This document shows, in pieces, positions 1 through 23,850 of a stretch of 64,000 nucleotides of DNA. The notes under the pieces were generated by a model that was not told where the DNA came from, did not search any database, and saw only the letters and a program-made list of their open reading frames with translations. The stretch is from Macrostomum lignano. Lineage: Eukaryota. The position numbers were made by a program, and so were the translations under genes. Numbering within the stretch: the stretch's first letter is position 1; every line of letters begins with the position of its first letter. Location of the stretch: positions 1 to 64,000 of the forward strand of contig NIVC01000178.1 of the NCBI GenBank assembly GCA_002269645.1, read 5' to 3'.

Positions 1-1213
1 ATCTGAAGCAGTAGCTAGATTCCCTATTCTGCGCGGACAACGCCCTTCACCACAATGCCTGATGAGGCTGAAGTCTTCTTCAGCAGCACTACCTGTCCTT
101 GTAACCAGAAAGCAAGCTTCGTTTGATTATTAGCTGCATGCTTATCACCCGCGCAAGTGACCTGACGCCTGGGGCAACATCATACCCGCTGAGTCGTGCT
201 AGCATAATTGAAGCACTAAATTAACTTATATTGTGATCATATTGTCGCACAGGATACATAATGTCCATTACAATATCAGGCTTGAATTTAGCAGGTCAGA
301 TTTAAACTCCATCTCAGATTTTACATGCATATCGAGTTCATGCAGCAGTTGGAGAAGAGCCAAACCGAATACAAGTACATGTAATTACATATTCTTATTA
401 TGCTAGTTCTATAATGGTTGAAAATTATATATAGACGGTGCAGTCTAAGAGACAATTGCAGTATAATACGAGTATACCCCCTGCCAGTTTCCTTCCTAGG
501 GTACTGGCCAGTCTGCCAGTACCCTGCAGACAGGGTAGATTTAAATAAAAAACAAAAAAGGAACTTTCAGCGTTTCTTGTGTCTGTACAGCTCGTGCGCA
601 TACATTCTGCTTCATAATATCGTACAGCTAGTGGCGTTTTCAGAACACTTTTTTATTAACATACTGCAAAACGAGGGTTAGGAAGCATAGATGCTTTCTT
701 CTAAACTCTTTTTGTCATCTAGTATGCAACTATTTTTCGGATAGTATCCAGTCGAAGAGAGAAAAATTTCTGCAGTTTTTTGTGTCATGAGAGAAGGCTG
801 ACAACAAACCGGTTGGCAAAGGTTGAAATTCCGAACTGACACAGGCTCTATCCTTGCTGGCAAATGCATAGACTTTAGCAATACAAACGGGTTGATAGCG
901 AAAACAATCTAAAACAAAGTTTTAGCATCGTTCAATCGTAAAAACAGTTGGTTTAAAGACTGTAAGACAGCAGGACGGTAAATTTAAAATTTCATATGTC
1001 GTAATTACCACCGATTAATTTATTGTCAGATTTGTCAGATTTAGGTTGTAAAACGAAGTTTAAAAGCTATAGCTATCAAGAACGCTGGCGCCAACACTAA
1101 CCTTTGACTTTGTGATACTTGATATAGCTGCATCTACGAGCTACATGTACCAGCTTTCATCTGCCCCTGACATAGTCACGCTTTGCTCTTATGAGCGTTT
1201 AATCAACTCCGAT

Positions 1214-1937
1214 TCGCTTGAAGGTTAGTCTGTGGATCGCTTGAAGGTTAGTTAGTGTAGGGATCACTTGAAGGCTAGTCTGGGGATCACTTGAAGGTTA
1301 GTCTGGGGATCGCTTGAAGGTTAGTCTGTGGATCGCTTGAAGGTTAGTTAGTGTAGGGATCACTTGAAGGCTAGTCTGGGGATCACTTGAAGGTTAGTCT
1401 GGGGATCGCTTGAAGGTTAGTCTGGGATTGCTTGAAGGTTATTCTGGGATTGCTTGAAGGTTAGTCTGGGGATTGCTTGAAGGTTAGTCTGGGGATTGCT
1501 TGAAGGTTAGTCTGGGGATTGCTTGAAGGTTAGTCTGGGGATCGCTTGAAGGTTAGTCTGGGGCTCGCTTGAATGTTAGTCTGGGGATTGCTTGAAGGTT
1601 AGTCTGGGGATTGCTTGAAGGTTAGTCTGGGGATTGCTTGAAGGTTAGTCTGGGGATTGCTTGAAGGTTAGTCTGGGGATCGCTTGAAGGCTAGTCTGTG
1701 GATTGGTTGAAGGTTAGGCTGGGGTCGCTTGAAGGTTAGTCTGGGGATTGCTTGAAGGTTAGTCTGGGGATCGCTTGATAGTCTGTGGATTGGTTGAAAG
1801 TTAGTCTGGGGCTCGCTTGAAGGTTAGTCTGGGGATCGCTTGAAGGTTAGTCTGTGGATCGCTTGAAGGCTAGTCTGTGGATCGCTTGAAGGTTAGTCTG
1901 GGGATTGCTTGAAGGTTAGTCTGGGGATTGCTTGAAT
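1214..1937. repeat. 23-bp minisatellite, ~31 copies
   Basis: Unit approx. CGCTTGAAGGTTAGTCTGGGGAT repeated head to tail with point variants. Confidence 0.95.
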
Positions 1938-2274
1938 GAGTTAGTAAAGAAGGACGTGCGATCCCCAGTTGCATCATTGTCCTTTTAATAGGCTATTACT
2001 TCGATATTGACAACAAAGAGACACTAGTTGGTAGGTCAGTTCATTGCTCCTTCTAATTGGAAACCCAATTTAACACATTTAACGGCCGGGACTGTTGCAT
2101 CCAAGACCCCTTGCAAATGTCATGCACTTTGTGCACTTTCAGGATGATAGCTTAAGAGACATTGTCGCCTGTTTTCACTATGCAAGGCGCACTTCAAAGG
2201 GTATCTTTTTGTTCCGTGATTGGCGTGATGGCGGGAGGACTTGCTGAGCAGCTTCATTGGCGCTGAGGTCCTGG

Positions 2275-2571
2275 CAGTGCCAGCAGCCCAGTCTCGATTC
2301 ACAAGTGCAGTCACATTTTTGGAGCTAAATTGGAATTTCGGCTTGGCTCTGCTCGTGTAATTAACGTCATTGAGGGCCAACTCACAAGGCATAGTGAAGT
2401 GTACATGCCTAACAATAAATGAAGTTAGGGCTGCTGTGCACTCCTGTGTGAGTGTGTGCCTGTGCGTATGACTGCGTGCGCATCCGCGAGCTTGTATGCC
2501 TGCTCAGGGGAATCGGCGAAATGGGCAGTAATGACTCTCGCCGGTTGTGTGACAATGTCGCTTAAAGTGCG
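2275..2571 (+). mobile_element. SINE-like dispersed repeat, copy 1
   Basis: About 300 bp alignable by eye to 56069-56367, e.g. shared CTCCTGTGTGAGTGTGTGCCTGTGCGTATGACTGCGT and ATGACTCTCGCCGGTTGTGTGACAATGTCGCTTAAAGTGCG. B-box-like CTCGATTC near the 5' end. Confidence 0.6.
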
Positions 2572-2966
2572 TCAGGGTACACACAGCCCCTGCCTATAAC
2601 TAACACAATAAGGTCCCAGTGTACAGTAGGTCAGTGCTGATGGACGCTTGACCAAGGAGTAATCTGGTGGCTAACGGTTTCCTTCCAGGGTGATAGCGGC
2701 CTTGCAACTCTTTGCCTGTGTTTAGCAGGAAGTCCCAGCATTTTCTTCTTTTTCGGCCAATGGCTCTTAGTCAACGTGAAGCAACTAGTCGTATTCACAT
2801 GTTGTATATTTTTAAGGTCAATATTTACGATGAAAAAGTGATATTCGGTTGCAATTTATTGCACTTTTAATTTTTCAATATTTAAATTCTACAAGTCGAA
2901 CTGGGATAACATTCTTACTGCTTATCAATCTTTTCGTGCGCTTCATCAAAGTTTCATGCTCAGGAG

Positions 2967-5900
2967 TCACTTATTGTACAGCACTCCGTCCAGCCACAGC
3001 CCCAGTGCCTCGACGTCGCAGTCATCGGCGCTCATGTCGAACCAGTTCGTCGCCGGCCCGGACTCCCCGCCGTCCAGTCGCTGATTCGCCAGCGCCCGGT
3101 AGCGAGCTCTCGACCGGCTGTCCACCTGCGAGTGAATAAAGATCGATACTGTATGTCTCACTCACACACAGTAGTGAGGCAGAGCTGTCTCACTCACACA
3201 GCAGTGAGGTACAGCTGTCTCACTCACACAGCAGTGAGGCAAAGCTACTCAAAACTCACACCTGCTCACTCAGTCTCACCTGTCCAACCTGAACTACCAG
3301 CAGGCGGCGTCTGAACGAGTTCGCAGCGAGGAAGGCTTGGAACTCGCACTGCAGCTCGGCCTCGTCTCTGAGCCAGCTGAGCAGGCCGTTGCTGAGCAGC
3401 AGCACGAACTGGCGAGTTCGCTTCATCAGGAAGCTGTTGATGCGGCTGGCTGGCGAGGCGCCCTCGAAGTTGTCAGGCCAGCGAGCAGCCAGGGCCGCGT
3501 CATTGGTGCCGAGCCGAACGCCTTGGAGGCGACGAACGATGAGCTCGACGACGGTGTTCGAGCTCGAATCTGGGTCGGCTCGGGACTCGGAGTCAGAGGC
3601 GGACTCAGGAGCGGACAGGATGAAGACCTCCGGCACTTTGTCCGAGTGGAACGGCGGCCAGTCCCGAATCGTGCTCAGGATGGTGCGGCTTCCTTTATAT
3701 TGGTTATGTGATTATAGATTATATGGGTAATGGTGGAAATTCCGAGCTCATCGTTTTGAAGCCGATTTCAGAACAGTGCCGCAATAATTTGTGTACTTAC
3801 TTATAAAATCTATTGTCTGCTCAACGTCCACAATTAATGGCTGCCCCTCGCCTGGAAGGTCTAATAGCTCTTCAGGCTCCGATGCGGTCCCGACGGTAAT
3901 ATCAAGGCGGTCAGCTACCGCGGGCGTGGCCGCCGCTGAAGTCTCTGGCGGAACAGACGAGTCAAACACGAGAACGGCGGCCGGATCTCGGTTCCGAATG
4001 CGCTCGATGAGTCGGTATTCCCAGTCAACGGACTTGTATTCGATGTCGCTCCCTGCGAGGATTCTCTGCAGAGTGTGGAACGCCTCCACGTCCTCAGGTC
4101 CGAGCTGTCTCTGGCGCTGAAGCGACACTCTGCGCGAGCTCAGGCGCAGAAACACGATGTCCTTGAACGGATTCCGACCTAAGCTGTCGAGATCTCGAAT
4201 CACCTGACACAGAGCCAGGTACTGGGTGTCGAGAAACCTCTCGGACAAAGCCACCACCACCTTGCCGCTGAACTTGGCTCCCTCAGCCGGACAGTCAAAG
4301 TAGGTGAGCGGACAGGAGCACAGGTCCGAGTAGAGGAAGCTCTCCGGAACGCACAGCTCGAGCTCGTCTCCGCCCGAGGCGCTGCGCACGCAGTTCAGCA
4401 CGTCGACCAGACAGTCCTGGTCTCTGTCCGACGCCCACAGCATCGCGTCGTACGGCAGCGAGTCCCGAGATGTCTGCTGCTGCAGTCGCCGACTGCTCTG
4501 GTACTTGAGGAGGATGAGGACTCGAACCACGGCCAGCAGTCGGTGTCGACGGCGGACAGCGAGCACCGCGAAACCGAGCAGCGCGAGACCGAATAATGAG
4601 GACAGAATGATCAGGACGATCTGCCTTCGCTGCTGTGCTGCCGAGTCCGCTATAAGCTCGCACACCCTGACGAGTCCGCCCTCATCGCTCACTGGATAGT
4701 CGCGAGATCCATTGCTTAAAAGAATTTTTTGGCAATCAAGTCGCCAGGCATCATTCCATCTGTTCAATTCGCAGGCTTCAATAATTGCCGGATCCACTTG
4801 GCAACGCATACTTTCGAAATCTGGGACAACTTGCGTTGTGCGCGCCACACTAATTAGAGATTTGTGAAGACTTGTCCACATTTCGTTACACTGACAGTGC
4901 CACGGATTGCTGCTGATCTTGAGTTCGTTTAAATTTGGAAGACAGCTAGAATTTAACAAATAGGGGTCAATCCAAGTTAGGTTGTTTCTCAATAGACTTA
5001 GCCGAATCAGATCTGAATTCGGTGAGCAGAAAGCTTTTGCCGGTACTTTTTCAAGCCTGTTGTCGTCCAAGTATAGAAACTTTATCGAAGTTTTATCTAC
5101 GAACGCATTCTCTTCGATGTAGCGAATGTTGCTATTGTTGAAAAACAAAACTACTAAGGCATCGCGGAGTTTTGGTGTTTCCCATTTCAGTGTGGAATTT
5201 GTTATTCTGTGGAAATAGTCGGACTCCCTGATTCCGGAAAAGTACATGTACTTTACAGGGATGCGCAGCAGTATGCTGACCATGTTTACATCAATATTGG
5301 TACAGTTGAGGTCGGACAACTCCCACTTGGCCGTGTGGTAGCAGCTGCAGTCGGGTACGCAAGTCTCCCAACACTCAAACGTGCTGTTAGTCAGGCCTGT
5401 TATGGGGATTGGTTCATTTGCGTACGACGCATACTGAGATTGTGGGGGTTGTTCGCAGTATTTTTTCGGTAATTTCTGTTCATAGTCGCCACTGAAGGCA
5501 CATAAGAACTCGCGGTACGATGCACCACTTAGTTTTCTAGTTGAGTTAGCACCGTCCTTCAAGAAGAATAGGCATGACGTAATTTCCAATTCGTGCTTAG
5601 GGATCGCTGGATAGTGGTAGTTAGTCCTTTCCAAGTCGGTCTCTTCCTCTGTTATGTAAGCGTAGACGTGATAGCAGTTGCAGACCGTTTTAACCTTTTG
5701 CCCGCTTATTAACAAGACAACACGAGAGCTTAAGGTTGGACGCTCCGACATGTTGAAGCTGTATGCATACATATTTTCTAAGCTATTGTTCCTTAGATCT
5801 ATTGTCTCCAAGGCTGGACGATTGTTGAAAGCGTTGTAGGAAATCGAGCTGATTGAATTGTTGGTCAGATTGATCCACCTAAGCCTTTCCGACTGGGGAA

Positions 5901-7858
5901 TGGAACTGAGCTCGATATTTGCCAGGCCACCATTTCGAATGCTCAGAGTCTCCAGGCGGCTCAAGCACTTTAAATGAATGTAGGGCAGTTGGTTGTCGTC
6001 GAGGTTAAGCGCCAGCAGGCTCTTTGACAGCAGCGAATAGCTGAATGCGTCCGAATTGATGCTCACAATAAAATTATTCTGCAGGTACAGCTCGGCCAGT
6101 GCCACCTAGATGTGACGAGTTGGGTTTTAAACTTGCTGGGTATCTTTTTTTACTAGAACAATTGTCGCGGCGTCATTTAAAGGTATCCGAGAAGATAGAA
6201 ACAGCTAGTAGAATTTAGAACAATGTCCGTTTAAAGACATTGTGGGTTGTCAACAGGTTTTATTATAAAACCCCAATACGAGGCTATCAAGAGAACTAGC
6301 GGTAAGCCCGTCTGACTCTCGCGCAACGACCCCTGGTTCGATTCCGCGCGCGGCCTCATACATTTGGGGCTTGTGTGCACGAAAAATGGTTGGGGGGGGG
6401 GGGTTTGTGCACTTCACACCCTGTGTGAGCGAGTGCATGAGTGAGTGCCTGCGTACAGTATTGGAGCGCTTGTGGAGTCAGTGGAATGAACAGAATGGCC
6501 TCAGCGTTGGTTGTGGGACAATGTCGCCGAAGACGTGCCTACAGCCATCCTGCGAATGAAAATATGAATAATATTTTTTCAATGCACCTTACCCCGTGCC
6601 AAGGTTGAATTTCGCCAATTTGTTTGATTCGATTGTAAGAAAGGTTCAGCACTTTCAGAGTCTGCCTGGATCCTCTGAACCAATAGCAGTGTCTGGTAGA
6701 GTTTGCCTTGTCTTCCTCGCGTATAGGAGGGTACCAGCACAGCCAGCTGTGATACAGCCTGCGTATTTTGTTGTGACTAAGGTCAATTGCATTTAAATTG
6801 CCAAACATGCTGATAGAAAAAGGGATCTCGGTCAGCTCATTGTATTGCAAGTTCAAGTAACTGAGAGCTACGTCGAACGGAATGTCGGAGGGAGAAAAGC
6901 CACTGCCCAGGCTGATGGTTCGGTAGCCGAATAGCAGCGAAAAGCTGATGTTGAATGAGTCCATCATGTCGTACAGATTGATTACCAAGTTCAGTTTGCC
7001 GGAGTCCTGCCTCATCTTACGCAGTCGTTTAATAGCCTCTGCTACTTGAGGATTCTCAGTGACTGGCTGCGGACCAACTCGTTGCAGATATTCATCTAGA
7101 GCCGTCAGCGCTTTCGACAAAGCGTCATCGGCAAACGTTCTCACGCTGCAGTTGCGCAGGGTCAAGCTATCGATTGACCGAAGGGCCAGTAGGTCAGTCA
7201 TCGATACCCACGTGATCGGCGACTCAACGATGCTTACACTACGAATGTACTGGCATTTGTGTAGAACATAGGCGGGCAAGTACCACATACTGCTCCGTCT
7301 GATGTGCAGGTAAGTCAGCCAACAATCGGACGCGTTGAAATCAGTCGGGTAGGTGACATTCACGGTGTAGTAGCCACCAACACCCGGATGTTGTGGCACA
7401 CCGAACTGTGCTATCTCCATGCCTTCAGTGACGCTGACATTCTCAGCTCTCAACTGCATCATTCTAATATTGAGACTGTTGACCCGACAATCGTTCAGTG
7501 AAATCTCCGACGGCGGATAAAAGTTTATCTGCTGGTCATCGTCATAATGAGCTCGAGTCATCTCGTGCATGTTCACTGAGACGCAGTTGCTGCAACCGGA
7601 GCAGCTGATGTTTAGGTGAGCAATCACTTTTGTAGGCAGGTTGGAGCAGCTGATGCTGCTATTTGCTGCCGTTAATCCTTTTTTAACGATCTCGCACAAG
7701 AAGTCGTATTCCGAAGAAACCGTATGACATCGACAGTCGTACGTGCGGCTGTAGTCGTGAAGAAAATCGACATAGCTCGGCAAAGAAGATTCACCGTGCA
7801 AACAGCAGCTGCTGAGAAGCAGCAGAGGCAGGGCTAGAGACACAAGATAGCGAGGCAT
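2967..7858 (-). CDS. Toll-like receptor: signal peptide, two LRR blocks with cysteine clusters, TM helix, TIR-like domain and second TIR-like domain; ~1380 aa
   Basis: Model complement(join(2967..3125,3280..3692,3801..6105,6593..7858)), 4143 nt, in frame. Donors GTAAGG, GTAAGT, GTGAGA and acceptors CTAG, TAAAG, CGCAG have matching phases. Signal MPRYLVSLALPLLLLSSCC; LRRs such as LSYLNLQYNELTEIP and LKVLNLSYNRIKQI; internal CNC and CVPDCSC clusters; NPWHCQC cap; TM IVLIILSSLFGLALLGFAVLAV; TIR box1-like YDAMLWAS. Confidence 0.85.
3149..3245. repeat. 30-bp tandem repeat (~3 copies) in TLR intron 3
   Basis: CTGTCTCACTCACACAGCAGTGAGG(C/T)A(G/C)AG repeated. Confidence 0.85.
6280..6358 (+). pseudogene. 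Degenerate tRNA-like sequence or tRNA-derived SINE head in TLR intron 1
   Basis: GAGGCT...GGCCTC acceptor-stem-like pairing, A-box-like TAGCGGTAAG and B-box GGTTCGATTCC. The D, anticodon and T stems pair poorly, so it is not called a functional tRNA. Confidence 0.5.
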
Positions 7859-13200: not shown

Positions 13201-16200
13201 CACTTAAAGCAACACCGGAAGTACTATTTGGTTGTCACTTGAAGCAACACCGGAAGTACTATTTGGTTGTCACTTGAAGCAACACCGGAAGTACTATTTA
13301 GTTATCACTTAAAGCAACACCGGAAGTACTATTTGGTTATTACTTAAAGCAACACTGGAAGTACTATTTAGTTATCACTTAAAGCAACACCGGAAGTACT
13401 ATTTGGTTGTCACTTGAAGCAACACCGGAAGTACTATTTGGTTGTCACTTGAAGCAACACCGGAAGTACTATTTGGTTGTCACTTGAAGCAACACCGGAA
13501 GTACTATTTGGTTGTCACTTGAAGCAACACCGGAAGTACTATTTGGTTATCACTTAAAGCAACACTGGAAGTACTATTTAGTTATCACTTAAAGCAACAC
13601 CGGAAGTACTATTTGGTTATCACTTAAAGCAACACTGGAAGTACTATTTGGTTATCACTTAAAGCAACACCGGAAGTAAAATTGGTTATCACTTAAAGGA
13701 ACACCGGAAATACTATTTGAATATCACTTGAAGCAACACCGGAAGTACTATTTGGTTGTCACTTGAGGTAACACACCGGAAGTGTCTATAACATCAAGCA
13801 ACATTTTTACCTTGGCCCTGAGCTGTTGAATCATCCAGCCGACACCAGAGCCAGCAGCGGCGCACCCGACCAAACTGCTTGACCGGCCCAGCGGCAGCGG
13901 CAGCAGCAGCAGAGGCAGCCAGTCGATCTCGCAGCGCTGCAACCGCCGCAGTCGCAGTCTCACTGGCCTGCCATTCGACCAGATCCACATCCGCTGGTCC
14001 GGGAGCTTCGATCACCTCCTGCAATACGGCGTCTTGCACGCCGCAACGAATCAACGCCCTCTCCAGTTTATTATTTGCACCGCTGGCTATTATACTACTG
14101 CCGCTAGACGGACCGGCAGTAGTAGATGCAGCCTTTGATTCTGTCTGCAACTTTGGTATCTTTGCTATTTTCGATTTCAATTTCTTTGCTTTGCCATCGA
14201 GAGCCGCCGGCGGCTTCCGCTTGGCCGGTGAGGCATCCAGACGGGCTTTGCGAAGTACTCGACGAACTTCAGCGTCAATTTGAGGATTTGAGCGTTCCGC
14301 TGCCTCAAGCCGGTGCTGACTGGCTCGCGGCACCAGGGCCGACACCAGGGGGTCCGCAGAGTCCGCTGCATCTCTGGAGGTCGACGGCCCGGCGCCGGTT
14401 TTGTCTGGTTAATTGAGAAGGGAATTATGGCTTTGATTCATACCTGGAGCATAATGAAATCCCAACTATTCTTCCCAATGGGATCAAGATTTACCTGGAT
14501 GATTATGAAATCCCAACGATTCTTCCCAATGAGATCAAGATTTACCTGGATCAAATTATGAAATCCCAAAGATTCTTCCCAATGAGATCAAGATTTACCT
14601 GTATCAAATTATGAAATCCCAAAGATTCTTCCCAATGGGATCAAGATTTACCTGGATCAAATTATGAAATCCCAACAATTCTTCCCAATGAGATCAAGAT
14701 TTACCTGAATAATTATGAAATCCCAACAATTCTTCCCAATGAGATCAAGATTTACCTGAATAATTATGAAATCCCAACAATTCTTCCCAATGAGATCAAG
14801 ATTTACCTGAATAATTATGAAATCCCAACAATTCTTCCCAATGAGATCAAGATTTACCTGAATAATTATGAAATCCCAACAATTCTTCCCAATGAGATCA
14901 AGATTTACCTGGATGAATATGAAATTCCAAAATTCTCTCCAATGGGATCAAGATTTACCTGGATCAAATTATGAAATCCCAAAATTCTCTCCAATGGGAT
15001 AAAGATTTACCTGGATCAAAATATGAAATCCCAAATATTCTTCCCAATAGGATAAAAATTTACCTGGATCAAAATATGAAATCCCAACTATTCTTCCCAA
15101 TAGGATAAAAATTTACCTGGATCAAAATATGAAATCCCAACTATTCTTCCCAATAGGATAAAAATTTACCTGGATAAAATTATGAAATCCAAAAATCTTT
15201 GCCAATAGGATCAAGATTTACCTGGATCGAAATATGAAATCCCAAAAGTTATTTGACTTTGAACAAGTATTAAATCTGATAAATTAAAGTGCTTTGGATT
15301 ACTTAAAATCTTGAACAGTGGTCTCACCCGAACCCCGCTGTCCATCTCCATAGTCGAACGCGGCCTGCTTTACCACAAACTCGATTCGATGGCCGTCGAC
15401 TTCCTGGCGCTTGGCGCCGCGAGCGCGTTTCCTGTCACCGCCGCTCTTGTCTTTGCTTTTCTTCTTCTTTTTCTTCTGCTTCTTCTCTTTACGACGGGAT
15501 TTCTCTTGAGCCGGCTCCCTGGTCTCGGCCGGCTCGGCCTCGGCGCCTGACGGGGCGCTAAATTCGCGCGCCACTTTGGCGCTTAACTTGCGCGCCAATT
15601 CGCGCAATTCTGCGCGTCTGCTGTCGGTCAACTGGGCCGCTGCGACCGGCGCTGCTGGGGGTGGTGAGATGAAGATTAAGTAATAAATATCATTTTCCAG
15701 AAAACTGTAAGGTGCAGAATGCAATTTAGCTAGAATTAACTTCAGGATCCAGCTAAACTTCAGGATCCAGCTAAACTTCGGGATCCAAATAGACTTCAGG
15801 ATCCAACTAAACTTCAAGATCCAAATAGACTTTAGGATCCAGCTAAACTTAAGGATCCAACTAAAAAACTTTAGGGTCAAACTAAAAAACTTTAGGGTCA
15901 AACTAAAAAACTTTAGGGTCAAACTAAAAAAACTTTAGGATCCAACTAAAAAACTTTAGGGTGCAAACTAAAAAACTTTAGGCTGCAAACTAAAAAAATT
16001 TAGGGTCCAAACTAAAAAAACTTTAGGGTCCAACTAACAAACTTTAGGGTGCAAACTAAAAAATTTTAGGGTCCAAACTAAACAACTTTAGGGTCCAACT
16101 AAGAAACTTTAGGGTGCAAACTAAAAAAACCTCTAACATTCGAGCTCGTAACTACATTAAACTTCATGGACCAAATAGGAAACTTCAGGACCAGACACGA

Positions 16201-16671
16201 AGTCAAGCAACAAAGTCCAACAAACAATCCAACACAAACCATCACTAGCGGACGACTCTTTCATCGCGTCCACATCGGTGGAGGCCGTCTCAGCTTCGCT
16301 GTCAGACGCTGCGCCCAGATCGACTCCGGCAGCTTCTTGACGCTGTCGCAAGGCGTCGAACCTGTTGGTGCTGGCCCCCGTGCCGGTGAACAGCGCCCTG
16401 GTCTCCGTGCCTTCGACGTCGTCTTTCAGAGCGAACAGCTCGTCTAAATTGTTGGCCTTGAAGAAGCGGCGCTGTCGAGGATCGCGAAGGATTCTGTTGG
16501 CCAGGAACTGCTTGAAGATCTGGCGATGGTAAACTTTCTCTTCGATTGTGCCGGAGGACAGCAGGCGGTAGATCACCACGTCTCTCTGCTGCCCGATGCG
16601 CCAGGCACGCTCTCGGGCCTGGTTGAGTGATTGATTAGATAGATAGATAGATAGATGATAGATAGATAGAC

Positions 16672-16711
<40 letters not shown>

Positions 16712-16726
16712 GATAGATAGATAGAC

Positions 16727-16766
<40 letters not shown>

Positions 16767-16805
16767 GATAGATAGATAGACAGATAGATAGATAGATAGA
16801 TAAAC

Positions 16806-16847
<42 letters not shown>

Positions 16848-17082
16848 CTAGATAGATAGATAGATAGATGATAGATAGATAGATAGATGATAGATAGATA
16901 GATATATATAGATGATAGATAGATAGATAGATAGATAGATAAATAGATAGATGGATGATAGATAGATAGATGATAGATAGATAGATAGATGATAGATAGA
17001 TAGATAGATAGATAAATAGATAGATGGATGATAGATAGATAGATGATAGATAGATAGATGATAGATAGATAGATAGATAGAT

Positions 17083-17137
<55 letters not shown>

Positions 17138-17580
17138 GATAGATAGATAGATAGATGATAGATAGATAGATAGATAGATAAATAGATAGATGGATGATAG
17201 ATAGATAGATGATAGATACATAGATAGATAGATAAATAGATAGATGGATGATAGATAGATAGATGATAGATAGATAGATGATAGATACATAGATAGATAG
17301 ATAAATAGATAGATGGATGATAGATAGATAGATGATAGATAGATAGATAGATAGATAAATAGATAGATGGATGATAGATAGATAGATGATAGATAGATAG
17401 ATAGATAGATAAATAGATAGATGGATGATAGATAGATAGATGATAGATAGATAGATAGATACTGTAGATGATAGATGATAGATAGATAGATAGATAGATA
17501 AATAGATAGATGGATGATAGATAGATAGATAGATAAATAGATAGATGGATGATAGATAGATGATAGATACATAGATAGAG

Positions 17581-17612
<32 letters not shown>

Positions 17613-20600
17613 TATTAATAAACGGATTGATTAAAGTTTCTCCCCATCAATCAAACCTGCAAATCCGTGCACGGATTCCAGTCGGGATCGAATATGATGA
17701 CCCGATTAGCCCCGGTCAAGTTGACTCCAATCCCGCCAACTCGCGAGGTCAGCAGGAACACAAACGTGCCAGGATCCGTATTGAACCTGTGCACCAGGGT
17801 CTGCCGGCTGCGTACGGCTGTGCCGCCGTCCATCCGCATGTAGGGATAGCCGCGCTTCTTCACGAACGCCTCCAGCACCCCCAGCATCCGGCGGCTCTGG
17901 CTGAACAGCAGCACTTTGTGACCATCCGAGCGCCAGGCCTTCAGCAGAGCGTCAACAACCAGCATCTTGCCGGAGCGCTTGTAGTAGCCGAATGTCAGAG
18001 ACTCGCGCGACGGCAGGCCGAACTTCTGCGGCGGCCCAGTTGACAGGTCCGGATGGTTGCAGATCTTGCGGAGGGTGGACAGGCCTGGGAATACCTGTGG
18101 GATTGGGGTGGTGGCGGGTTGTAAGCTATAGGACTGATTATTCATTTCCCTACCAAACCGTTTAAATGTTCTACCATTGTCTACCCACGTGTCTACCTAC
18201 TTAGTACTTGGCTGCCTAAACATCTACCTACCTGTCTAAAAATCTATCTACCTGTCTATCAAAATCTACCTGCCTAACTACCAATATATCAGTCTAATTT
18301 AATCTACCTGTCTACCCAAATCTACTGTCTACCCAAATCTACCCGTCTACCCTAATCTACTCTGTCAACCTTGATCTACCTGTCTACCCAAATCTACTGT
18401 CTACCCTAATCTACCCGTCTACCCTAATCTACTCTGTCAACCTTGATCTACCTATCTACCCAAATCTACTGTCTACCCTAATCTACCCGTCTACCCTAAT
18501 CTACCTGTCAACTGATCTACCTGTCTACCCTAATCTACCTGTCTACCCTAATCTACCTGTCTACCCTAATCTACCTGTCTACCCTAATCTACCTGTCTAC
18601 CCTAATCTACCTGTCTACCCTAATCTACCTGTCTACCCTAATCTACCTGTCTACCCTAATCTACCTGTCTACCCTAATCTACCTGTCTACCCTAATCTAC
18701 CTGTCTACCCTAATCTACCTGTCTACCCTAATCTATCTGTCTACTCAAACCCACCTGTCTACTCAAACCCACCTGCAACCCGAATCTACCTACCCACCTA
18801 AATCTACCTGTCTACCTAAATCTACCTGCTCACAAATCTACATATCGGCATACCAATTTATCTACCATTCTAGCGGTCTACCAATCCGCCTACACTACCT
18901 ACCTACAAATCTACCTATCAAGCTCTGTTCAGTAATCAACCGATCTGCTAATCTACCAAATAAACCTTACCATATAGCGACCCTCCAGAATCTGCCGGCA
19001 CTCCCTAGACGCCAGGTACTCCTTGTACACATCGCGTTGATAGTCAGACAGACGACAGAATAGCACCTGTTCGCTTTTGCCCGGCAATTGCAGGCGCACG
19101 TCCTCTTTCATTCGGCGCAATAGATAAGGATTGATGGTGTCCCGCAGGCTGCAGGCGCATCTGGTTTTGTATCAAGAAATAATTACCAGTGAATGAACAA
19201 ATTATCACTCCATTTGAACTATTCCATGCACTGCTATTTAGTTCTATTACTGTTAGTAGTAAATCTAGGAAAATTACTACGGGTCTACTGTCCAGCGGTC
19301 TAGAGCATTTATCTGTCAGGTGTAGACCTCTTAACCCCTAATTAGAGATCCCATCATCCAGGTATTAATCCTTAATTAAAGATCCCATCATCCAGGTACT
19401 AATCCCTAATTATAGATCCGATCATTAATCCCTAATTATAGATCCGATCATCCAGGTATTAATCATTAATTAGAGATCCCATCATCCAGGTATTAATCCA
19501 TAATTAGAGATCCCATCATCCAGCCATTAATCCATAATTAGAGATCCCATCATTCAGCCATTAATCCATAATTAGAGATCCCATCATCCAGGTATTAATC
19601 CATAATTAGAGATCCCATCATCCAGGTATTAATCCCTAATTAGAGATCCCATCACACAGCCATTAATCCCTAATTAGAGATCCGGTCATCCAGGTATTAA
19701 TCATTAATTAGAGATCCCATCATCCGGGTATTAATCATTAATTAAAGATCCCATCATCAAGGTATTAATCCCTAATTAGAGATCTTATCACACAGGTATT
19801 AATCCCTAATTAGAGATTCCATCACACAGGTATTAATCCCTAATTAAAGATCCCATCACACAGGTATTAATCCCTAATTAGAGATCCCATCATACAGACA
19901 TTAATCCCTAATTAGAGATCGCATCACCCAGTTAATAATAAAATATCTATAAATATACTATTAGCACATAAAGGCGGAACCAACCTGTAAGCCAATTCCA
20001 CCTGGAATTTGCTAGCGCTAGCGTAACCACCCTGTAGAATAGGGGTGGCCAGGTGCTGCATAAAGTCTTGCAGGTCGCCCAGTTTGCCAGGATAGACAAA
20101 GTCGAATAGAGACCAAAGTTCCTGGTATTGGGGGTTCGGTGTGATTGGTTTAAATTTGATATTTTTAACAGCTATTCAAATGCTTATTGATAAATTGTAT
20201 TTTTTAGCTTAAGTTGGTACTGTAAGTTGGTAAACAAATTGCAAAGTGTTAGGATATCACGAAGGCCATTAATTCAGCAGTATAAAACACACTTATTTTT
20301 AATAAGTAGTATATAACAGCCGCAATTAATCAGTAGTATACAACACACTCAATAATCAGTAGTATATAACACACACAAGCAATCAGTAGTATATAACACA
20401 CTCAATAATCAGTAGTATATAACACACAAGCAATCAGTAGTATATAACACACACAAGCAATCAGTAGTATATAACACACACAAGCAATCAGCAGTTTATA
20501 AAACACACAAGCAACAGTAGTATATAACACACTCAATAATCAGTAGTATATAACACACAAGCAATCAGTAGTATATAACACACACAAGCAATCAGCAGTA

Positions 20601-23600
20601 TATAAAACACTCAAGCAATCAGTAGTATATAACACACTCAAGCAATCAGTAGTATATAACACACTCAAGCAATCAGTAGTATATAACACACTCAAGCAAT
20701 CAGTAGTATATAACACACACAAGCAATCAGTAGTATATAACATACTCAAGCAATCAGTAGTATAAAACACTTTTAATTAATCAGTAGTATACAGCACAGT
20801 CAATTAATCAGTAGTATTAAAACACACTCAAGCAATCAGTAGTATAAAACACAATTAATCAGTAGTATACAGCACACTCAATTAATTAGTAAGTATATAA
20901 CACACCCAATTAATTAATCAGTAGTATTAAAACACACTCAAGCAATCAGTAGTATAAAACACAATTAATCAGTAAGTATATAACACACCCAATTAATTAA
21001 TCAGTAGTATTAAAACACACTCAAGCAATCAGTAGCATATATCAGTAGTTTAAGGTTAAAAAGTAGTATGTTCACCGCTCACCTTAAGATTATTTTGCAT
21101 CGGAGTACCGGATATAATTATCCTATGCGGCGTCGGGAACTGCTTGCAAGCGATAGTAACATCGCTAGTTGGATTCTTAATCCGATGGCCTTCGTCCAGG
21201 ATGACGTAATCCCATCTGTACTTTAACAGAATATCCCTATGCATAGTTAAGGTATTGTAGGTAGTCAGCAATATGCCGGGATGATTGGCAATGCTGTGCA
21301 CTAATTTAGCAGGTTTAGAGTAGCCGCTACCAGTAGAGTGCAGAATAGCCACCCGAAATCTCGGGTACCACTGTCGCAGCTCGCCAAGCCACTGCTGCAG
21401 CACGGTGCCCGGACAGGCGATTAGCACAGGGCCAAGACGAGGACCGCCTAGCCGGTTGTGACTGTAGGACAGGCCAGCCAATAGGGCAATCATTTGCACA
21501 GTTTTGCCCAGGCCCATCTGATCGCCCATAATACCGCCAACTCCCTGCAGTGATGTTGCATTGTGCTTGATTGTGTTTTCTTATACGAGTATGATATGAA
21601 TTTTTCAAAACAATCTATGGGTTTCTTATCCAGATCTTATAGACTTTTTATCCAGATCTATAGATTCCTCATCAAGATAGATATCTCATCAAGATCTAAA
21701 TATTCCTCATCAAAATCTATAGGTTCCTTATAATCAAGATCTATAGATTCCTCATCAAGATCTAAAGATTTCTCATCAAAATCTATAAATTCCTCATCAA
21801 GATCTAAAGATTTCTCATCAAAATCTATAAATTCATTATCAAGATCTATAGATTTCTCATCAAGATCTATAAATTCTTTATCAAGATCCATAGATTTCTC
21901 ATCAAGATATATAGATTTCTCATCAAGATCTATAGATTCCTCGTCGAGATCTTTAGATTTCTCTTAAAGATCTATAGATTTCTTATCAAGATCTGTAGAT
22001 TTCTTATCAAGATCTGTAGATTTCTTATCAAGATCCATAGATTCCCCATCAAGATCTATAGATTTCTCTTTAAGATCTAAAGATTCCTTATCAAGATCTA
22101 TAGATTTTTCATCAAGATTTATAGATTCCTCATCAAGATCTATAGATTTTTTATTAAGACCTATAGATTCCTTATCAAGATTGGTAGATTCCACGTCCGG
22201 TATACTAAAATGGTTTGTCTAGATCTGAGTACTAACAAATATCAATCATGTAAAGTACTCAAAACCCTCCAACCTGCCTGAGAGTGCAGCTCCCTCAGCC
22301 AGCGCACGGCCACTCGCTGATAAGGAAACAAAGACTGCCAGATTTTTCTGGGCAAAGCGAACGCCAAACCATCTGGCAGGCCTTCTAATTGCATCGGCAA
22401 ATCGTCGGATTCATCGTTAAAGTCATCGCCGCTGCCGCCGCCACCGTCCTCCAGACGAACCTGCCTGTCGATGAGTTCGCTGCGATTCAGACGGGCGATG
22501 CGCCTCTCGTAGGCCAGTAGGCTGGCGTCATCCAGCAGAGGACGGGCTCGCTGTTGCTGCTGCTGCTGATGCTGAGCCTCCTGATGAAGCTCCGAGGATG
22601 CCGCTGAAGAAGGCGACTCTGGAGGCGACTCCTCCACAAGGCGAACTGACTGTCTTCGACGTTGCTGGTGTTGCTTCTGCTGCTGTCGAGAGCGCTTTGT
22701 TGCAGGGACGCTTCGCGTGCTTGAATGGTCCACCTGATTAATTCAGATAGGCCATAAACATCTGAGAAAGATATCTGTTAGCTCTTGTTAGGATAGCTCG
22801 TACAAAGACTTGCATTACATCGAAACAAAGACTAGTTGCTTCTCTTAATAGACACGAATTGTGACAGGAAACAAAGTCTACAACTATGGTCCAGTATAAA
22901 CGCAGAGTCAGAAGCAGACAAAAATAAAGACTCCTCTACTTCTGTATCGGCTCTAATCAAAACCAGAGGAAAAACAAAGACTCCTCTACTTCTGTATCGG
23001 CTCTAATCAAAACCAGAGGAAAAACAAAGACTCCTCTACTTCTGTATCGGCTCTAATCAAAACCAGAGGAAAAACAAAGACTCCTCTACTTCTGTATCGG
23101 CTCTAATCAAAACCAGAGGAAAAACAAAGACTACTGCACTATTGACGCTGGTAATGAATAAGCAAGCCAATCTCAACAATGTAAACAAACCTCAACACAA
23201 ACTGCTGGCCGCTTCACAGCCACAGGCCTCTCAATTGAAGGCGCGGCAGCGGCCCTGCCAACTCCGGCGAATCCCATGTCGCAATCCGCATCCCCAGTTG
23301 CTGCAACCCGATTCGTCGTGCCAGCAGCCTCAGCTTCGGCAACAGCTTCCGCTTCTAAAGATGCAGCTTCGATTCGTTCCTTAGTAGCTCGACGCCTCGC
23401 CTCCAACGTTTGCAACTGGCGGACGCGAGCCTCGGCCGCCGCTTCCATCGAACGAATTCGACGCGTCTTGGCCGGATCGCAGCTTCCAGACTCGGCATCT
23501 CGCAGAGCCGCATCAAGTTGAGCCTCGCAGCTGGCCAGATCCCGACGAGCGCTATCGGCGTCGGATTCGATGCGAGCCAATTGAGCTCGAAGTCCGGCCA

Positions 23601-23807
23601 ATTCTGCTGCTCTTCGACGCTCAAGTTCGCCGCTGAGCTGGCGGACAACGGCGGAGTCGAGTTCGGCTCGGTCGTATTGGCGAACTCCGGCTAGGCTGCT
23701 CAGAGCGGCCTCGCTGGCTGCGCGAGGCGGCAGAGTCGGTGGCGGCGGTGGCGGCAGCATGCCAGACTCTCTACCATCTTCATCAGCCGCCAGCTCTCCT
23801 TCTTGCT

Positions 23808-23838
<31 letters not shown>

Positions 23839-23850
23839 AGGCTGCAGCAT
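10219..23850 (-). CDS. ERCC6: DNA excision repair protein ERCC-6 / CSB / Rad26 (Snf2-family ATPase), ~1353 aa
   Basis: Model complement(join(10219..10637,13811..14404,15328..15654,16240..16618,17657..18094,18971..19160,19985..20121,21083..21544,22278..22733,23191..23850)), 4062 nt, in frame. Motifs [98 protein letters not shown] and a CSB-type C-terminus LLRQMCDF...WTLKPEF. The exon 1, 2 and 9 donors are uncertain by a few codons. Confidence 0.93.
11669..12450. repeat. 34-bp minisatellite, ~23 copies (ERCC6 intron 9)
   Basis: Unit GAGTGTCATAAAATATCCCTAAAAGCAACACCGG. Confidence 0.95.
12510..13785. repeat. 35-bp minisatellite, ~36 copies (ERCC6 intron 9)
   Basis: Unit AAGTACTATTTGGTTGTCACTTGAAGCAACACCGG. 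Confidence 0.95.
14452..15245. repeat. 51-52-bp minisatellite, ~15 copies (ERCC6 intron 8)
   Basis: Unit AATTATGAAATCCCAACAATTCTTCCCAATGAGATCAAGATTTACCTGAAT. Confidence 0.92.
15735..16130. repeat. Adjacent 18-bp and 21-bp minisatellites (ERCC6 intron 7)
   Basis: AACTTCAGGATCCAGCTA followed by AACTAAAAAACTTTAGGGTCA units. Confidence 0.9.
16637..17612. repeat. (GATA)n microsatellite (ERCC6 intron 6)
   Basis: About 1 kb of imperfect GATA; source of the spurious YLSI-repeat ORF. Confidence 0.97.
18290..18800. repeat. 18-bp minisatellite (ERCC6 intron 5)
   Basis: Unit ATCTACCTGTCTACCCTA. Confidence 0.93.
19335..19915. repeat. 34-bp minisatellite (ERCC6 intron 4)
   Basis: Unit ATTAATCCCTAATTAGAGATCCCATCATCCAGGT. 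Confidence 0.92.
20300..21050. repeat. 27-bp minisatellite (ERCC6 intron 3)
   Basis: Unit AATCAGTAGTATATAACACACTCAAGC. Confidence 0.92.
21620..22190. repeat. 21-bp minisatellite (ERCC6 intron 2)
   Basis: Unit ATCAAGATCTATAGATTTCTC; source of the spurious DLDEKSI-repeat ORFs. Confidence 0.92.
22925..23130. repeat. 50-bp tandem repeat, ~3.5 copies (ERCC6 intron 1)
   Basis: AAAGACTCCTCTACTTCTGTATCGGCTCTAATCAAAACCAGAGGAAAAAC repeated exactly. Confidence 0.93.

What the first reader, a model, noticed from the sequence alone, without database searches (positions are those of the whole stretch)
2967..7858. Full-length multi-cysteine-cluster Toll-like receptor in a flatworm-like genome
Seen: a clean 4-exon frame gives signal-LRR-[Cys cluster]-LRR-[NPWHCQC]-TM-TIR. 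Known: this two-block layout is the insect Toll (mcc) type, and canonical LRR-TM-TIR receptors have been reported missing from planarians and schistosomes. Inference: if the host is an early-branching flatworm, this is a retained or re-assembled TLR. It is invisible in the ORF track because it is split over four ORFs.
Basis: partly seen in the sequence, partly recalled or inferred. Interest (0 to 1): 0.7.

Follow-up and report, generated by a model that had tools for sequence, protein, structure and literature searches.

The report
Cryptic Toll-like receptor in a flatworm
The window is from the free-living flatworm Macrostomum lignano and carries an expressed, intact gene with the full layout of an insect-type Toll receptor; its signalling domain is too divergent for standard searches, which probably explains why surveys report that flatworms have no Toll-like receptors.

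Summary
On the minus strand, exons 7858-6593, 6105-3801, 3692-3280 and 3125-2967 splice with GT-AG into a 1380-aa protein. Its order is signal peptide, Cys cluster, LRRs, LRRCT+LRRNT clusters, LRRs, LRRCT (NPWHCQC), one TM helix and a 441-aa tail.

The host is Macrostomum lignano. Two RNA-seq-derived GenBank proteins are exact substrings of the model and cover all three junctions. UniProt already auto-names the protein 'TIR domain-containing protein', so the gene is in databases. Three papers, one naming M. lignano, report no TLRs in Platyhelminthes.

The TIR call is remote:
- Pfam finds no TIR, even at E<=10.
- Both AlphaFold runs gave low confidence for the tail.
- A profile-profile comparison of tail domain 1 with Toll TIR domains gives P=6.7e-6 (score 42 against 13±3 for shuffled columns), with box 1 and the core strands in register.
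- The canonical BB-loop motif is absent.

- A second conserved C-terminal domain of unknown fold.
- A tandem paralogue about 6 kb downstream with a saturated ectodomain but 95-100% identical tail DNA (gene conversion).
- A third, distant paralogue.

Verdict: a divergent mcc-type TLR family in a flatworm, confidence about 0.7.

The parts
2967..7858 (-). Whole coding region of the TLR-like gene. It has 4 exons and encodes 1380 aa. It corresponds to GenBank BOX15_Mlig012993g2 / Mlig004240g1 and UniProt A0A1I8HAC1.
   Evidence: Spliced translation. PAA61380.1 and PAA88685.1 are exact substrings. P0001 is 96% identical over 100% of the query.
6593..7858 (-). Exon 1 (aa 1-422). It holds the signal peptide (7858-7793), an N-terminal Cys cluster (aa 42-92, 7735-7583), an irregular N-terminal region, and the first LRRs from aa 332 (6865 onward).
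   Evidence: The donor GT is at 6592-6591. The same intron position occurs in paralogues P0002 and P0058.
6106..6592 (-). Intron 1 (487 nt, GT..AG).
   Evidence: No tRNA or Rfam match inside it.
3801..6105 (-). Exon 2 (aa 423-1190). It carries the rest of LRR block 1, both central Cys clusters, LRR block 2, LRRCT2, the TM helix, tail domain 1 and most of the linker, all in one exon.
5737..6865 (-). LRR block 1 (aa 332-545; spans intron 1).
   Evidence: Pfam LRR_8 2.2e-29, best stretch aa 471-531; LRR_4 aa 400-439. LxxLxLxxN motif scan.
5296..5706 (-). Central cysteine clusters: LRRCT1 (aa 556-624, 5706-5500) and LRRNT2 (aa 639-692, 5457-5296). This is the feature that defines the mcc/P-type layout.
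   Evidence: Ten Cys are invariant in the alignment with Toll, Tollo, Toll-6, a mollusc TLR and a nematode TOL-1-like protein. Collinear phmmer matches link query 663-857 to the membrane-proximal block of the Tolls. The Pfam LRRCT and LRRNT models did not hit.
4732..5169 (-). LRR block 2 (aa 735-815) and the membrane-proximal LRRCT2 with NPWHCQC (aa 820-880).
   Evidence: AlphaFold pLDDT is 70-93 for this part. Best Foldseek hit is the TOL-1 ectodomain 8suf, E 2e-8.
4555..4623 (-). Single transmembrane helix (aa 917-939), followed by RRRHR.
   Evidence: Kyte-Doolittle maximum 2.71. Predicted as a long helix.
3979..4464 (-). Tail domain 1 (aa 970-1131), a divergent TIR domain. Box 1 is PYDAMLWAS. 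The central strand and helix are GKVVVALSERFLDTQY. The next strand is DIVFLRL. A box-3-like VDWEY is present. The BB loop is replaced by a Cys-rich insert.
   Evidence: For:
- hhalign against 5 Toll TIRs gives Prob 84.7%, P 6.7e-6.
- Shuffled-column null is 13.4±2.7, max 20.9, against 42.2 for the real profile.
- The real sequences rank above 9000 decoys with a Toll-only HMM.
- MAFFT gives the same register.

Against:
- Pfam finds nothing.
- The PDB HMM search finds nothing.
- pLDDT is 45-68.
3622..3978 (-). Variable acidic, Ala/Pro-rich linker (aa 1132-1214), including intron 2 (3800-3693).
   Evidence: 43% aa identity and pS 0.61 against the tandem paralogue. Predicted disordered. Nucleotide identity is at random level.
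2970..3621 (-). Tail domain 2 (aa 1215-1380; exons 3 and 4 with intron 3 at 3279-3126). It is a conserved alternating strand/helix domain of unknown family, possibly a second degenerate TIR.
   Evidence: 32% identical to the same region of the distant paralogue P0058, with the invariant motifs WPP, PDxFEGAS, TRQFV and RRxLV. hhalign against TIR is not significant (Prob 0.8; 10 of 200 shuffles reach the score). Pfam finds nothing. pLDDT is below 50.
3981..4700 (-). Gene-conversion tract 1, shared with the tandem paralogue Mlig017824g1. It covers the juxtamembrane region, the TM helix and domain 1.
   Evidence: 95-100% nucleotide identity, flanked by about 50%. pS 0.035 against about 0.8 in the ectodomain. 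blastn 96.1% over 727 nt.
2978..3674 (-). Gene-conversion tract 2, covering domain 2 and most of intron 3. It ends at the stop codon.
   Evidence: 87-100% nucleotide identity, intron included. pS 0.056. blastn 96.9% over 512 nt.
1..2631 (-). Intergenic DNA leading to the tandem paralogue. It is 99.6% identical to the start of GenBank contig NIVC01001362.1. On that contig the paralogue gene begins about 3.3 kb beyond the window edge, on the same strand.

Best explanation
This is an expressed, intact type-I membrane receptor of Macrostomum lignano. It descends from the multiple-cysteine-cluster (insect/protostome-type) Toll receptor family.

Shown here:
- The ectodomain runs LRRNT-like cluster, LRRs, LRRCT, LRRNT, LRRs, LRRCT.
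- There is one TM helix.
- Directly after it, in the same exon, lies a very divergent TIR domain.
- An approximately 80-aa variable linker and a second conserved domain of about 165 aa follow.

Inferred mechanism: ligand binding to the LRR solenoid dimerises the receptor. By analogy with Toll or TOL-1, the ligand could be an endogenous protein rather than a microbial pattern. Dimerisation brings the TIR domains together and recruits a cytoplasmic partner. Because the canonical BB loop is replaced, that partner is probably a co-diverged TIR adaptor or a lineage-specific protein, and the second tail domain may take part.

Family (shown): there are at least three paralogues. The tandem neighbour has a completely diverged ectodomain, but its two tail domains are kept almost identical by gene conversion. 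This suggests different ligands feeding one shared signalling output.

Why it was missed (inferred from their methods): published surveys first filtered proteomes with a TIR HMM, and this domain does not pass such a filter.
For: Gene and expression:
- Clean spliced ORF.
- Exact identity to two RNA-seq-derived GenBank proteins spanning all junctions.
- The 4-exon structure is conserved in paralogue P0002, and two intron positions are conserved in P0058.

Host: M. lignano.

Ectodomain:
- LRR Pfam hits.
- Global alignment is collinear with 8 Toll/TLR proteins, with 10 invariant Cys in LRRCT1, LRRNT2 and LRRCT2.
- phmmer matches to the Tolls are collinear.
- AlphaFold pLDDT is 70-93, and the best PDB neighbour is the TOL-1 ectodomain at E 2e-8.

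TIR:
- hhalign P 6.7e-6, Prob 85%, in the box 1 / central strand / next strand register.
- Score 42.2 against a shuffled-column null of 13.4±2.7, max 20.9, n=200; the reversed profile scores 10.4.
- A Toll-only HMM ranks both divergent domain-1 sequences above 9000 decoys.
- UniProt auto-names three paralogue entries 'TIR domain-containing protein' and names fragments 'Protein toll'.
- The predicted secondary-structure order, alternating strands and helices, fits a TIR.

Functional constraint:
- All three paralogues are intact.
- dN/dS is 0.19-0.28 in the tail domains.
- Sharp-edged conversion tracts coincide with the two tail domains.
Against: - No Pfam TIR or TIR_2 hit, even at E<=10 on the isolated domain.
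- A profile of domain 1 finds no TIR chain in the PDB, and the single sequence finds none either.
- AlphaFold confidence for domain 1 is low: mean 43.5 for the tail construct and 45-63 in the larger model. Foldseek on the tail model is uninformative.
- The RDxxPG BB-loop motif is absent in both divergent paralogues.
- An exhaustive phmmer search of 1.84 billion representative proteins with TM plus domain 1 found relatives only in M. lignano. There is therefore no cross-species conservation to lean on, and the profiles are very shallow (Neff about 1.5).
- The second AlphaFold run used an alignment that contained Tolls, so its resemblance to TOL-1 is not fully independent.
- No functional data exist.
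Confidence: 0.7

Rival explanations
1. An LRR-only 'TLR-like' membrane receptor, of the chaoptin, Slitrk or adhesion type. Its cytoplasmic tail would be a lineage-specific domain unrelated to TIR, and the hhalign similarity would come from a generic strand-helix pattern.
For: - Pfam, PDB sequence searches and AlphaFold/Foldseek all fail to call a TIR.
- The top non-flatworm hits of the whole protein are chaoptins.
- The BB-loop motif is absent.
- PMC8609888 notes that TLR-like, LRR-only proteins exist in flatworms.
Against: - The hhalign score lies about 10.7 SD above the shuffled-column null, and the alignment is in the correct TIR register, starting at box 1 about 30 residues after the TM helix.
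- Two domain-1 sequences only about 30% identical to each other both beat 9000 decoys.
- MAFFT finds the same register independently.
- UniProt's rule-based naming calls it TIR.
- Chaoptins have no TM helix plus tail of this layout; the matches to them cover LRRs only, 10-17% of the query.
Confidence: 0.17
2. A re-assembled, convergent TLR. Flatworms would have lost the ancestral TLR, and Macrostomum later fused an LRR-only gene with a TIR-only gene.
For: - No relatives of the tail outside M. lignano in 1.84 billion representative proteins.
- The TIR is unlike any canonical TLR TIR.
- The extra second tail domain is not a usual TLR feature.
- TIR-only and LRR-only genes are reported in flatworms.
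Against: - LRR block 2, LRRCT2, the TM helix and the TIR lie in one exon with no intron between ectodomain and TIR. Exon shuffling would not predict this.
- The whole stretch LRRCT1, LRRNT2, LRR, LRRCT2, TM, TIR is collinear with the Tolls.
- The TIR profile matches Toll-receptor TIRs in register.
- The sequences are too divergent for a decisive phylogeny, so this reading is disfavoured, not excluded.
Confidence: 0.1
3. A decaying relic or annotation artefact: a pseudogene, or a chimeric model that joins separate genes.
For: - GenBank holds this copy only as two partial models on different contigs.
- The UniProt models P0001 and P0069 have internal gaps.
- The assembly is known to be redundant (PMC5730564).
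Against: - The two partial models overlap by 381 identical residues and are exact substrings of one uninterrupted frame in this window.
- The paralogue P0002 is annotated full length with the same exon structure.
- There are no frameshifts or stops in any of the three paralogues.
- dN/dS is below 0.3 in the tail domains.
Confidence: 0.03

Closest known systems
Protostome-type (mcc / P-type) Toll receptors: Drosophila Toll, Toll-6, Tollo and their arthropod and mollusc relatives
   Same: - Type-I topology.
- LRR block, then LRRCT plus LRRNT cysteine clusters, then a second LRR block, then LRRCT (NPWxCxC), TM helix and TIR, all collinear in one alignment with invariant Cys.
- TIR box 1 (F/Y)DA and the core strands are in register.
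   Different: - Only 17-23% identity.
- The TIR fails the Pfam models.
- The RDxxPG BB loop is replaced by a Cys-rich insert.
- The N-terminal 330 aa are irregular.
- The tail is 441 aa with an extra conserved C-terminal domain.
- Pfam LRRCT and LRRNT are not detected.
Caenorhabditis elegans TOL-1, the sole nematode TLR (PDB 8suf)
   Same: - Best structural neighbour of the modelled ectodomain: E 2e-8 over about 370-380 aligned columns.
- It is also an mcc-type receptor in a lineage with a reduced Toll pathway.
- The Toxocara relative P0053 likewise has no precomputed Pfam TIR hit but is named a TIR protein.
   Different: - 16% identity.
- TOL-1 is single-copy with one TIR (own knowledge). The flatworm gene has at least three paralogues and a two-domain tail.
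- The model was built with a nematode relative in the alignment, so the match is not fully independent.
Twin-TIR TLRs described in bivalves (recalled from Gerdol et al. 2017; not read here)
   Same: A TLR-type receptor whose tail holds two globular domains in tandem. Domain 2 shows a TIR-like strand/helix rhythm (VFILSA ... TRQFVLLLS..LLSW ... RRLLVVQV).
   Different: Domain 2 has no significant similarity to TIR or to domain 1. Calling it a second TIR is a guess, not a result.
[quoted passage not shown]
   Same: The same phylum-level context: surveys report only split 'TLR-like' components in Platyhelminthes.
   Different: Here the LRRs, the TM helix and the TIR-like domain are on one polypeptide, and partly in one exon.

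Membership tests
Toll-like receptor (general definition used in PMC8609888: at least one LRR, a TM helix and a TIR on one protein) | Extracellular leucine-rich repeats | tested here: met
   Pfam LRR_8 2.2e-29 (6 stretches) and LRR_4 4.4e-14. About 13 LxxLxLxxN units.
Toll-like receptor | Signal peptide and a single transmembrane helix (type-I topology) | tested here: met
   The only two hydrophobic segments are aa 1-22 and aa 917-939, the latter followed by RRRHR. There are 21 N-glycosylation sequons in the ectodomain. No dedicated signal-peptide or TM predictor was available.
Toll-like receptor | Cytoplasmic TIR domain recognised by curated models (Pfam PF01582 or PF13676) | tested here: not met
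   No TIR family at E<=1 on the whole protein or at E<=10 on the isolated tail pieces. The precomputed Pfam lists for P0001-P0003 also lack TIR.
Toll-like receptor | Cytoplasmic domain homologous to TIR by remote-homology methods | tested here: met
   - hhalign Prob 84.7%, P 6.7e-6, 99 columns in register.
- Real score 42.2 against a null of 13.4±2.7, max 20.9; 0 of 200 shuffles reach it.
- A Toll-only HMM puts the three real sequences above 9000 decoys.
- UniProt's automatic name is 'TIR domain-containing protein'.
Toll-like receptor | TIR three-dimensional fold | tested here: inconclusive
   AlphaFold pLDDT is 43.5 for the tail construct and 45-63 for domain 1 in the larger model. The secondary-structure order is compatible with a TIR. 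Foldseek on the tail model found nothing at E<=0.001.
Toll-like receptor | TIR signature boxes: box 1 (F/Y)DA, box 2 RDxxPG (BB loop), box 3 FW | tested here: inconclusive
   Box 1 is present (YDA in the window protein, FDV in P0058), with invariant D in the alignment. Box 2 is absent in both paralogues. Box 3 is possibly VDWEY / IDWEY, but MAFFT did not align it to FW.
mcc / P-type (insect Toll-type) TLR | More than one LRRCT cysteine cluster, with an internal LRRNT | tested here: met
   LRRCT1 (C564, C566, C600, C624), LRRNT2 (C639 to C690) and LRRCT2 (C826, C828, C857, plus later Cys) align to the Toll clusters, with 10 invariant Cys. The Pfam LRRCT and LRRNT models themselves did not hit.
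Toll-like receptor | Signals through TIR adaptors (MyD88 or SARM type) to NF-kB or MAPK outputs | not testable with these tools
   No interaction or expression data. No paper linking Macrostomum and MyD88 was found.
Twin-TIR TLR | Second cytoplasmic domain is a TIR | tested here: not met
   - Domain 2 against the TIR profile: Prob 0.8%, and 10 of 200 shuffles reach the score.
- Domain 2 against domain 1: E 0.74.
- Domain 2 against the merged TIR profile: E 0.16.
- Pfam finds nothing.

The most novel reading that the evidence does not exclude
Platyhelminthes did not lose Toll-like receptors at their base. Macrostomorpha keep a small, expressed, tandemly evolving family of mcc-type TLRs. The TIR domain of this family has drifted beyond the reach of standard HMMs, and it is coupled to a second, previously undescribed conserved tail domain. 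The tail is homogenised by gene conversion while the ectodomains diversify. If so, the 'TLR-less' status of other lineages (planarians, parasitic flatworms, gastrotrichs, acoels) may partly be a detection artefact. The two-domain tail would then be a new signalling module.
Probability: 0.5. Interest if true: 0.7.

Novelty: new variant of a known kind. Interest (0 to 1): 0.58.

Why it matters
Reviews and three surveys or reviews read here state that flatworms have no TLRs. From this they argue for an early loss in the phylum, or a loss linked to parasitism, and they ask how flatworms sense microbes without TLRs. One survey lists M. lignano itself with zero TLRs.

A full LRR-TM-TIR receptor family in this free-living, transgenesis-ready model would have three consequences:
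- It would move the inferred loss to after the Macrostomorpha split.
- It would show that surveys which filter first with a TIR HMM under-count divergent receptors.
- It would give a tractable system (RNAi and transgenesis exist for this species, PMC5730564) to test what a Toll receptor does in a regenerating flatworm.

The mosaic pattern is also a neat example of concerted evolution confined to signalling domains. The ectodomains are saturated with change, while the tails are kept identical by gene conversion whose tracts end at the domain borders.

Tried and rejected
- **Pfam on the whole protein and on isolated tail pieces up to E 10:** only LRR families.
- **PDB sequence searches:** nothing with the tail or with a two-sequence domain-1 profile; the best hits were an endonuclease and a bacterial kinase at E about 0.5, judged chance.
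- **AlphaFold on aa 940-1190 with the 4-sequence family alignment:** pLDDT 43.5. Foldseek on it found nothing at E<=0.001 and was discarded as meaningless.
- **Second AlphaFold run (aa 534-1380, Tolls included in the alignment):** good ectodomain, but the tail stayed below pLDDT 63. It is used only for the ectodomain and the secondary-structure order.
- **Two alignment-mode searches of the 5.8-billion-protein collection with tail profiles:** nothing returned, not even the query's own paralogues. This looks like a word-prefilter limitation, so the searches say nothing about distribution. The whole-protein search also missed paralogue P0058, so it is not exhaustive.
- **Handing in the spliced tail for the exhaustive search:** The contiguous exon-2 part was used instead.
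- **Domain 2 as a second TIR or as a duplicate of domain 1:** not supported.
- **tRNA or SINE-like element in intron 1:** ARAGORN and Rfam were negative.
- **Purifying selection alone as the cause of identical tails:** rejected. Synonymous sites and intron 3 are identical too, and the tract edges are sharp.
- **TIR phylogeny:** not attempted. At 17% identity with a profile of Neff about 1.5 it would not be informative.

Full report
**1. The observation**

On the minus strand the four segments 7858-6593, 6105-3801, 3692-3280 and 3125-2967 are each bounded by canonical GT..AG. Together they give one uninterrupted 4143-nt frame, 1380 aa plus stop. An in-frame TGA lies 9 nt upstream of the start codon.

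Hydropathy shows two hydrophobic segments only, aa 1-22 and aa 917-939. The second is followed by RRRHR. This is a type-I membrane topology with a 441-aa cytoplasmic tail. Pfam finds strong LRR matches (LRR_8 2.2e-29, LRR_4 4.4e-14) and nothing else.

**2. Host and database status**

The whole protein matches Macrostomum lignano entries:
- UniProt A0A1I8HAC1, 'TIR domain-containing protein': 96% identity over 100% of the query. The differences are gaps in that gene model.
- Paralogue BOX15_Mlig017824g1: 57% identity.

M. lignano is a macrostomorph, an early-branching rhabditophoran flatworm.

GenBank PAA61380.1 (914 aa) and PAA88685.1 (847 aa) are exact substrings of my model, at aa 1-914 and aa 534-1380. 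They overlap by 381 residues and span all three junctions. That GenBank annotation was derived from RNA-seq by genome-guided transcript assembly (PMC5730564). So the gene is transcribed and the exons belong to one mRNA. The gene is present in databases under automatic names only.

**3. What the literature says**

[quoted passage not shown] Its method first selected proteins with a TIR HMM and then looked for LRRs.
- The planarian review PMC7958881 says the same.
- No paper in the held library describes a Macrostomum TLR.

**4. Ectodomain**

A MAFFT alignment with eight Toll, Tollo, Toll-6, mollusc TLR and nematode TOL-1-like proteins is collinear from the first LRRCT to the TIR. Ten cysteines of LRRCT1 (CxC...C...C), LRRNT2 (C...C...C..CxC...C) and LRRCT2 are invariant. 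Unfiltered phmmer gives matches in the same order. This is the multiple-cysteine-cluster layout.

The AlphaFold model of aa 534-1380 is confident for this part (pLDDT 70-93). Its best PDB neighbour is the C. elegans TOL-1 ectodomain, 8suf, at E 2e-8. That is about 100-fold better than Nogo receptor, Slit or VLRs. One caveat applies: Tolls were in the input alignment. The N-terminal 330 aa are irregular and family-specific.

**5. Is the tail a TIR?**

Negative results:
- No Pfam TIR or TIR_2, even at E<=10 on isolated pieces.
- No PDB TIR chain by sequence or by a two-sequence profile.
- AlphaFold confidence is low (43.5 and 45-63), and Foldseek on the tail model is uninformative.

Positive results:
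- An exhaustive phmmer search of 1.84 billion representative proteins with TM plus domain 1 found one further relative, P0058. This is BOX15_Mlig015932g1, also M. lignano, also auto-named a TIR protein. It is 28% identical and has the same overall architecture.
- A profile of the window protein, P0002 and P0058 was compared with five Toll TIR tails by hhalign. The result was Prob 84.7%, P 6.7e-6, over 99 columns. Box 1 (PYDAMLWAS against YDAFISYS), the LC of the second strand, the central strand and helix (GKVVVALSERFLDTQY against RTIIVLSRNFLxxEW) and the next strand are in register.
- With the query columns shuffled 200 times the score was 13.4±2.7 (max 20.9), against 42.2 for the real profile. 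The reversed profile scored 10.4.
- An HMM built from the Toll tails alone, run without filters, placed all three real domain-1 sequences (13.1-13.3 bits) above 9000 shuffled decoys (max 9.7).
- MAFFT found the same register independently.
- The predicted secondary structure alternates strands and helices as a TIR does.

I conclude that aa 970-1131 is a remote but real TIR homologue. Its BB loop (box 2, RDxxPG) has been replaced: by a Cys-rich insert in the window gene and by a different sequence in P0058. The fold itself remains unconfirmed.

**6. The rest of the tail**

After domain 1 comes a variable, predicted-disordered linker (aa 1132-1214). A second region (aa 1215-1380) follows. It is 32% identical between the window protein and P0058, with invariant motifs WPP, PDxFEGAS, TRQFV and RRxLV. 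It has a strand/helix rhythm reminiscent of a TIR. However, it has no significant similarity to TIR profiles, to domain 1 or to any Pfam family. I treat it as a conserved domain of unknown fold.

**7. Family and genome context**

- **Tandem neighbour.** Window 2631-1 is 99.6% identical to the first 2630 bases of GenBank contig NIVC01001362.1. On that contig the P0002 gene starts 3.3 kb further on, on the same strand. The window gene and Mlig017824g1 are therefore head-to-tail neighbours about 6.3 kb apart, with the same four-exon structure.
- **Third tail copy.** A third copy of the last exon lies tail-to-tail about 9 kb beyond P0002.
- **P0058.** It sits alone at another locus and shares the positions of introns 1 and 2.
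- **Mosaic divergence between the tandem pair.**

| Region | aa identity | pS |
|---|---|---|
| Ectodomain | 43% | about 0.8 (saturated) |
| Domain 1 | 98% | 0.035 |
| Linker | 43% | 0.61 |
| Domain 2 | 96% | 0.056 |

- **Tract edges.** At the DNA level two tracts, window about 4700-3981 and about 3674-2978, are 95-100% identical. The second includes intron 3 and stops at the stop codon. Everything around them is unalignable. Identical synonymous sites, an identical intron and sharp edges mean gene conversion, not just selection. dN/dS of 0.19-0.28 within the tracts shows constraint since then.

**8. Mechanism**

Shown: an expressed type-I LRR receptor with a Toll-type ectodomain and a TIR-homologous membrane-proximal tail domain.

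Inferred:
- Ligand-driven dimerisation juxtaposes the TIR domains and recruits a cytoplasmic partner.
- The lost BB loop and the extra domain argue for a co-diverged or lineage-specific adaptor.
- The shared, converted tail on divergent ectodomains argues for several ligands feeding one output.
- Whether the role is immune or developmental/neuronal (as for Toll-6/7/8 and TOL-1) cannot be told from sequence.
- LRR block 2, LRRCT2, the TM helix and the TIR share one exon. This favours retention of an ancestral TLR over re-assembly by exon shuffling. The sequences are too divergent to settle this by phylogeny.

**9. Verdict**

The gene is best described as a divergent variant of the mcc-type TLR family in a phylum reported to lack TLRs (confidence about 0.7). 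The main uncertainty is the unverified TIR fold. The finding is not new to databases, but it contradicts the papers read here and can be tested directly in a tractable model.

Noticed in passing
window 1-2631, and beyond the window edge (L001 5925-11414): A tandem paralogue (BOX15_Mlig017824g1, 1383 aa) lies about 6.3 kb downstream on the same strand. Its ectodomain is 43% identical to the window protein, but its tail domains are 96-98% identical through gene conversion.
   Followed up: yes
L001 20508-20660 (minus strand): A third copy of the last tail exon, with the same splice acceptor. It encodes ...DSRSRSRYRALANQRLESGECGFDMSAEDCDVEALGLWLD... and sits tail-to-tail with the paralogue, next to a long array of the ~32-bp repeat that also occupies intron 3 of the window gene. 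The rest of this copy lies outside the DNA fetched.
   Followed up: partly
window 3126-3279 (intron 3): The intron is made largely of ~32-bp tandem units (gcctcactgctgtgtgagtgagacagct...). Their copy number differs between the two tandem paralogues.
   Followed up: partly
window 1211-1945: A long tandem array with a unit of about 23 bp in the intergenic region between the two TLR-like genes. It is also present in the GenBank contig.
   Followed up: no
window 32553-33131 (-): An ORF with a fibrinogen C-terminal globular domain (Pfam 3.9e-34). This is a FREP-type lectin domain, another class often tied to invertebrate immunity.
   Followed up: partly
window 33544-34656 (+): An intact 370-aa ORF with a tyrosine-recombinase catalytic region (Phage_integrase 3e-7) plus DUF3504 (5.5e-6). 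This combination is typical of Crypton-type DNA transposons or their domesticated derivatives.
   Followed up: partly
window 16157-23850 (-): Exons of an ERCC6/CSB-like SNF2 helicase (SNF2-rel_dom 1.9e-42, Helicase_C 1e-19), interrupted by long tandem-repeat arrays that read as open frames.
   Followed up: partly
window 49244-49741 (+) and 61168-61962 (+): Two N-terminal exons of Cys-loop ligand-gated ion channels (Neur_chan_LBD 4e-25 and 1.9e-48), each starting with a signal peptide.
   Followed up: partly
window 23.7-25.4 kb, 44.0-45.5 kb, 51.3-53.1 kb, 56.5-58.0 kb, 61.8-63.3 kb: Five kilobase-scale tandem arrays with strong strand composition skew. They produce spurious 400-600-aa ORFs in several frames on both strands, so the ORF list in this genome is dominated by repeats.
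   Followed up: no
tool behaviour: The word-prefiltered protein search missed the clear paralogue P0058 (phmmer E 4e-142 when compared directly). It also returned nothing for two tail-profile queries. Absence of hits from that tool is not evidence of absence for LRR-rich or low-complexity queries.
   Followed up: yes
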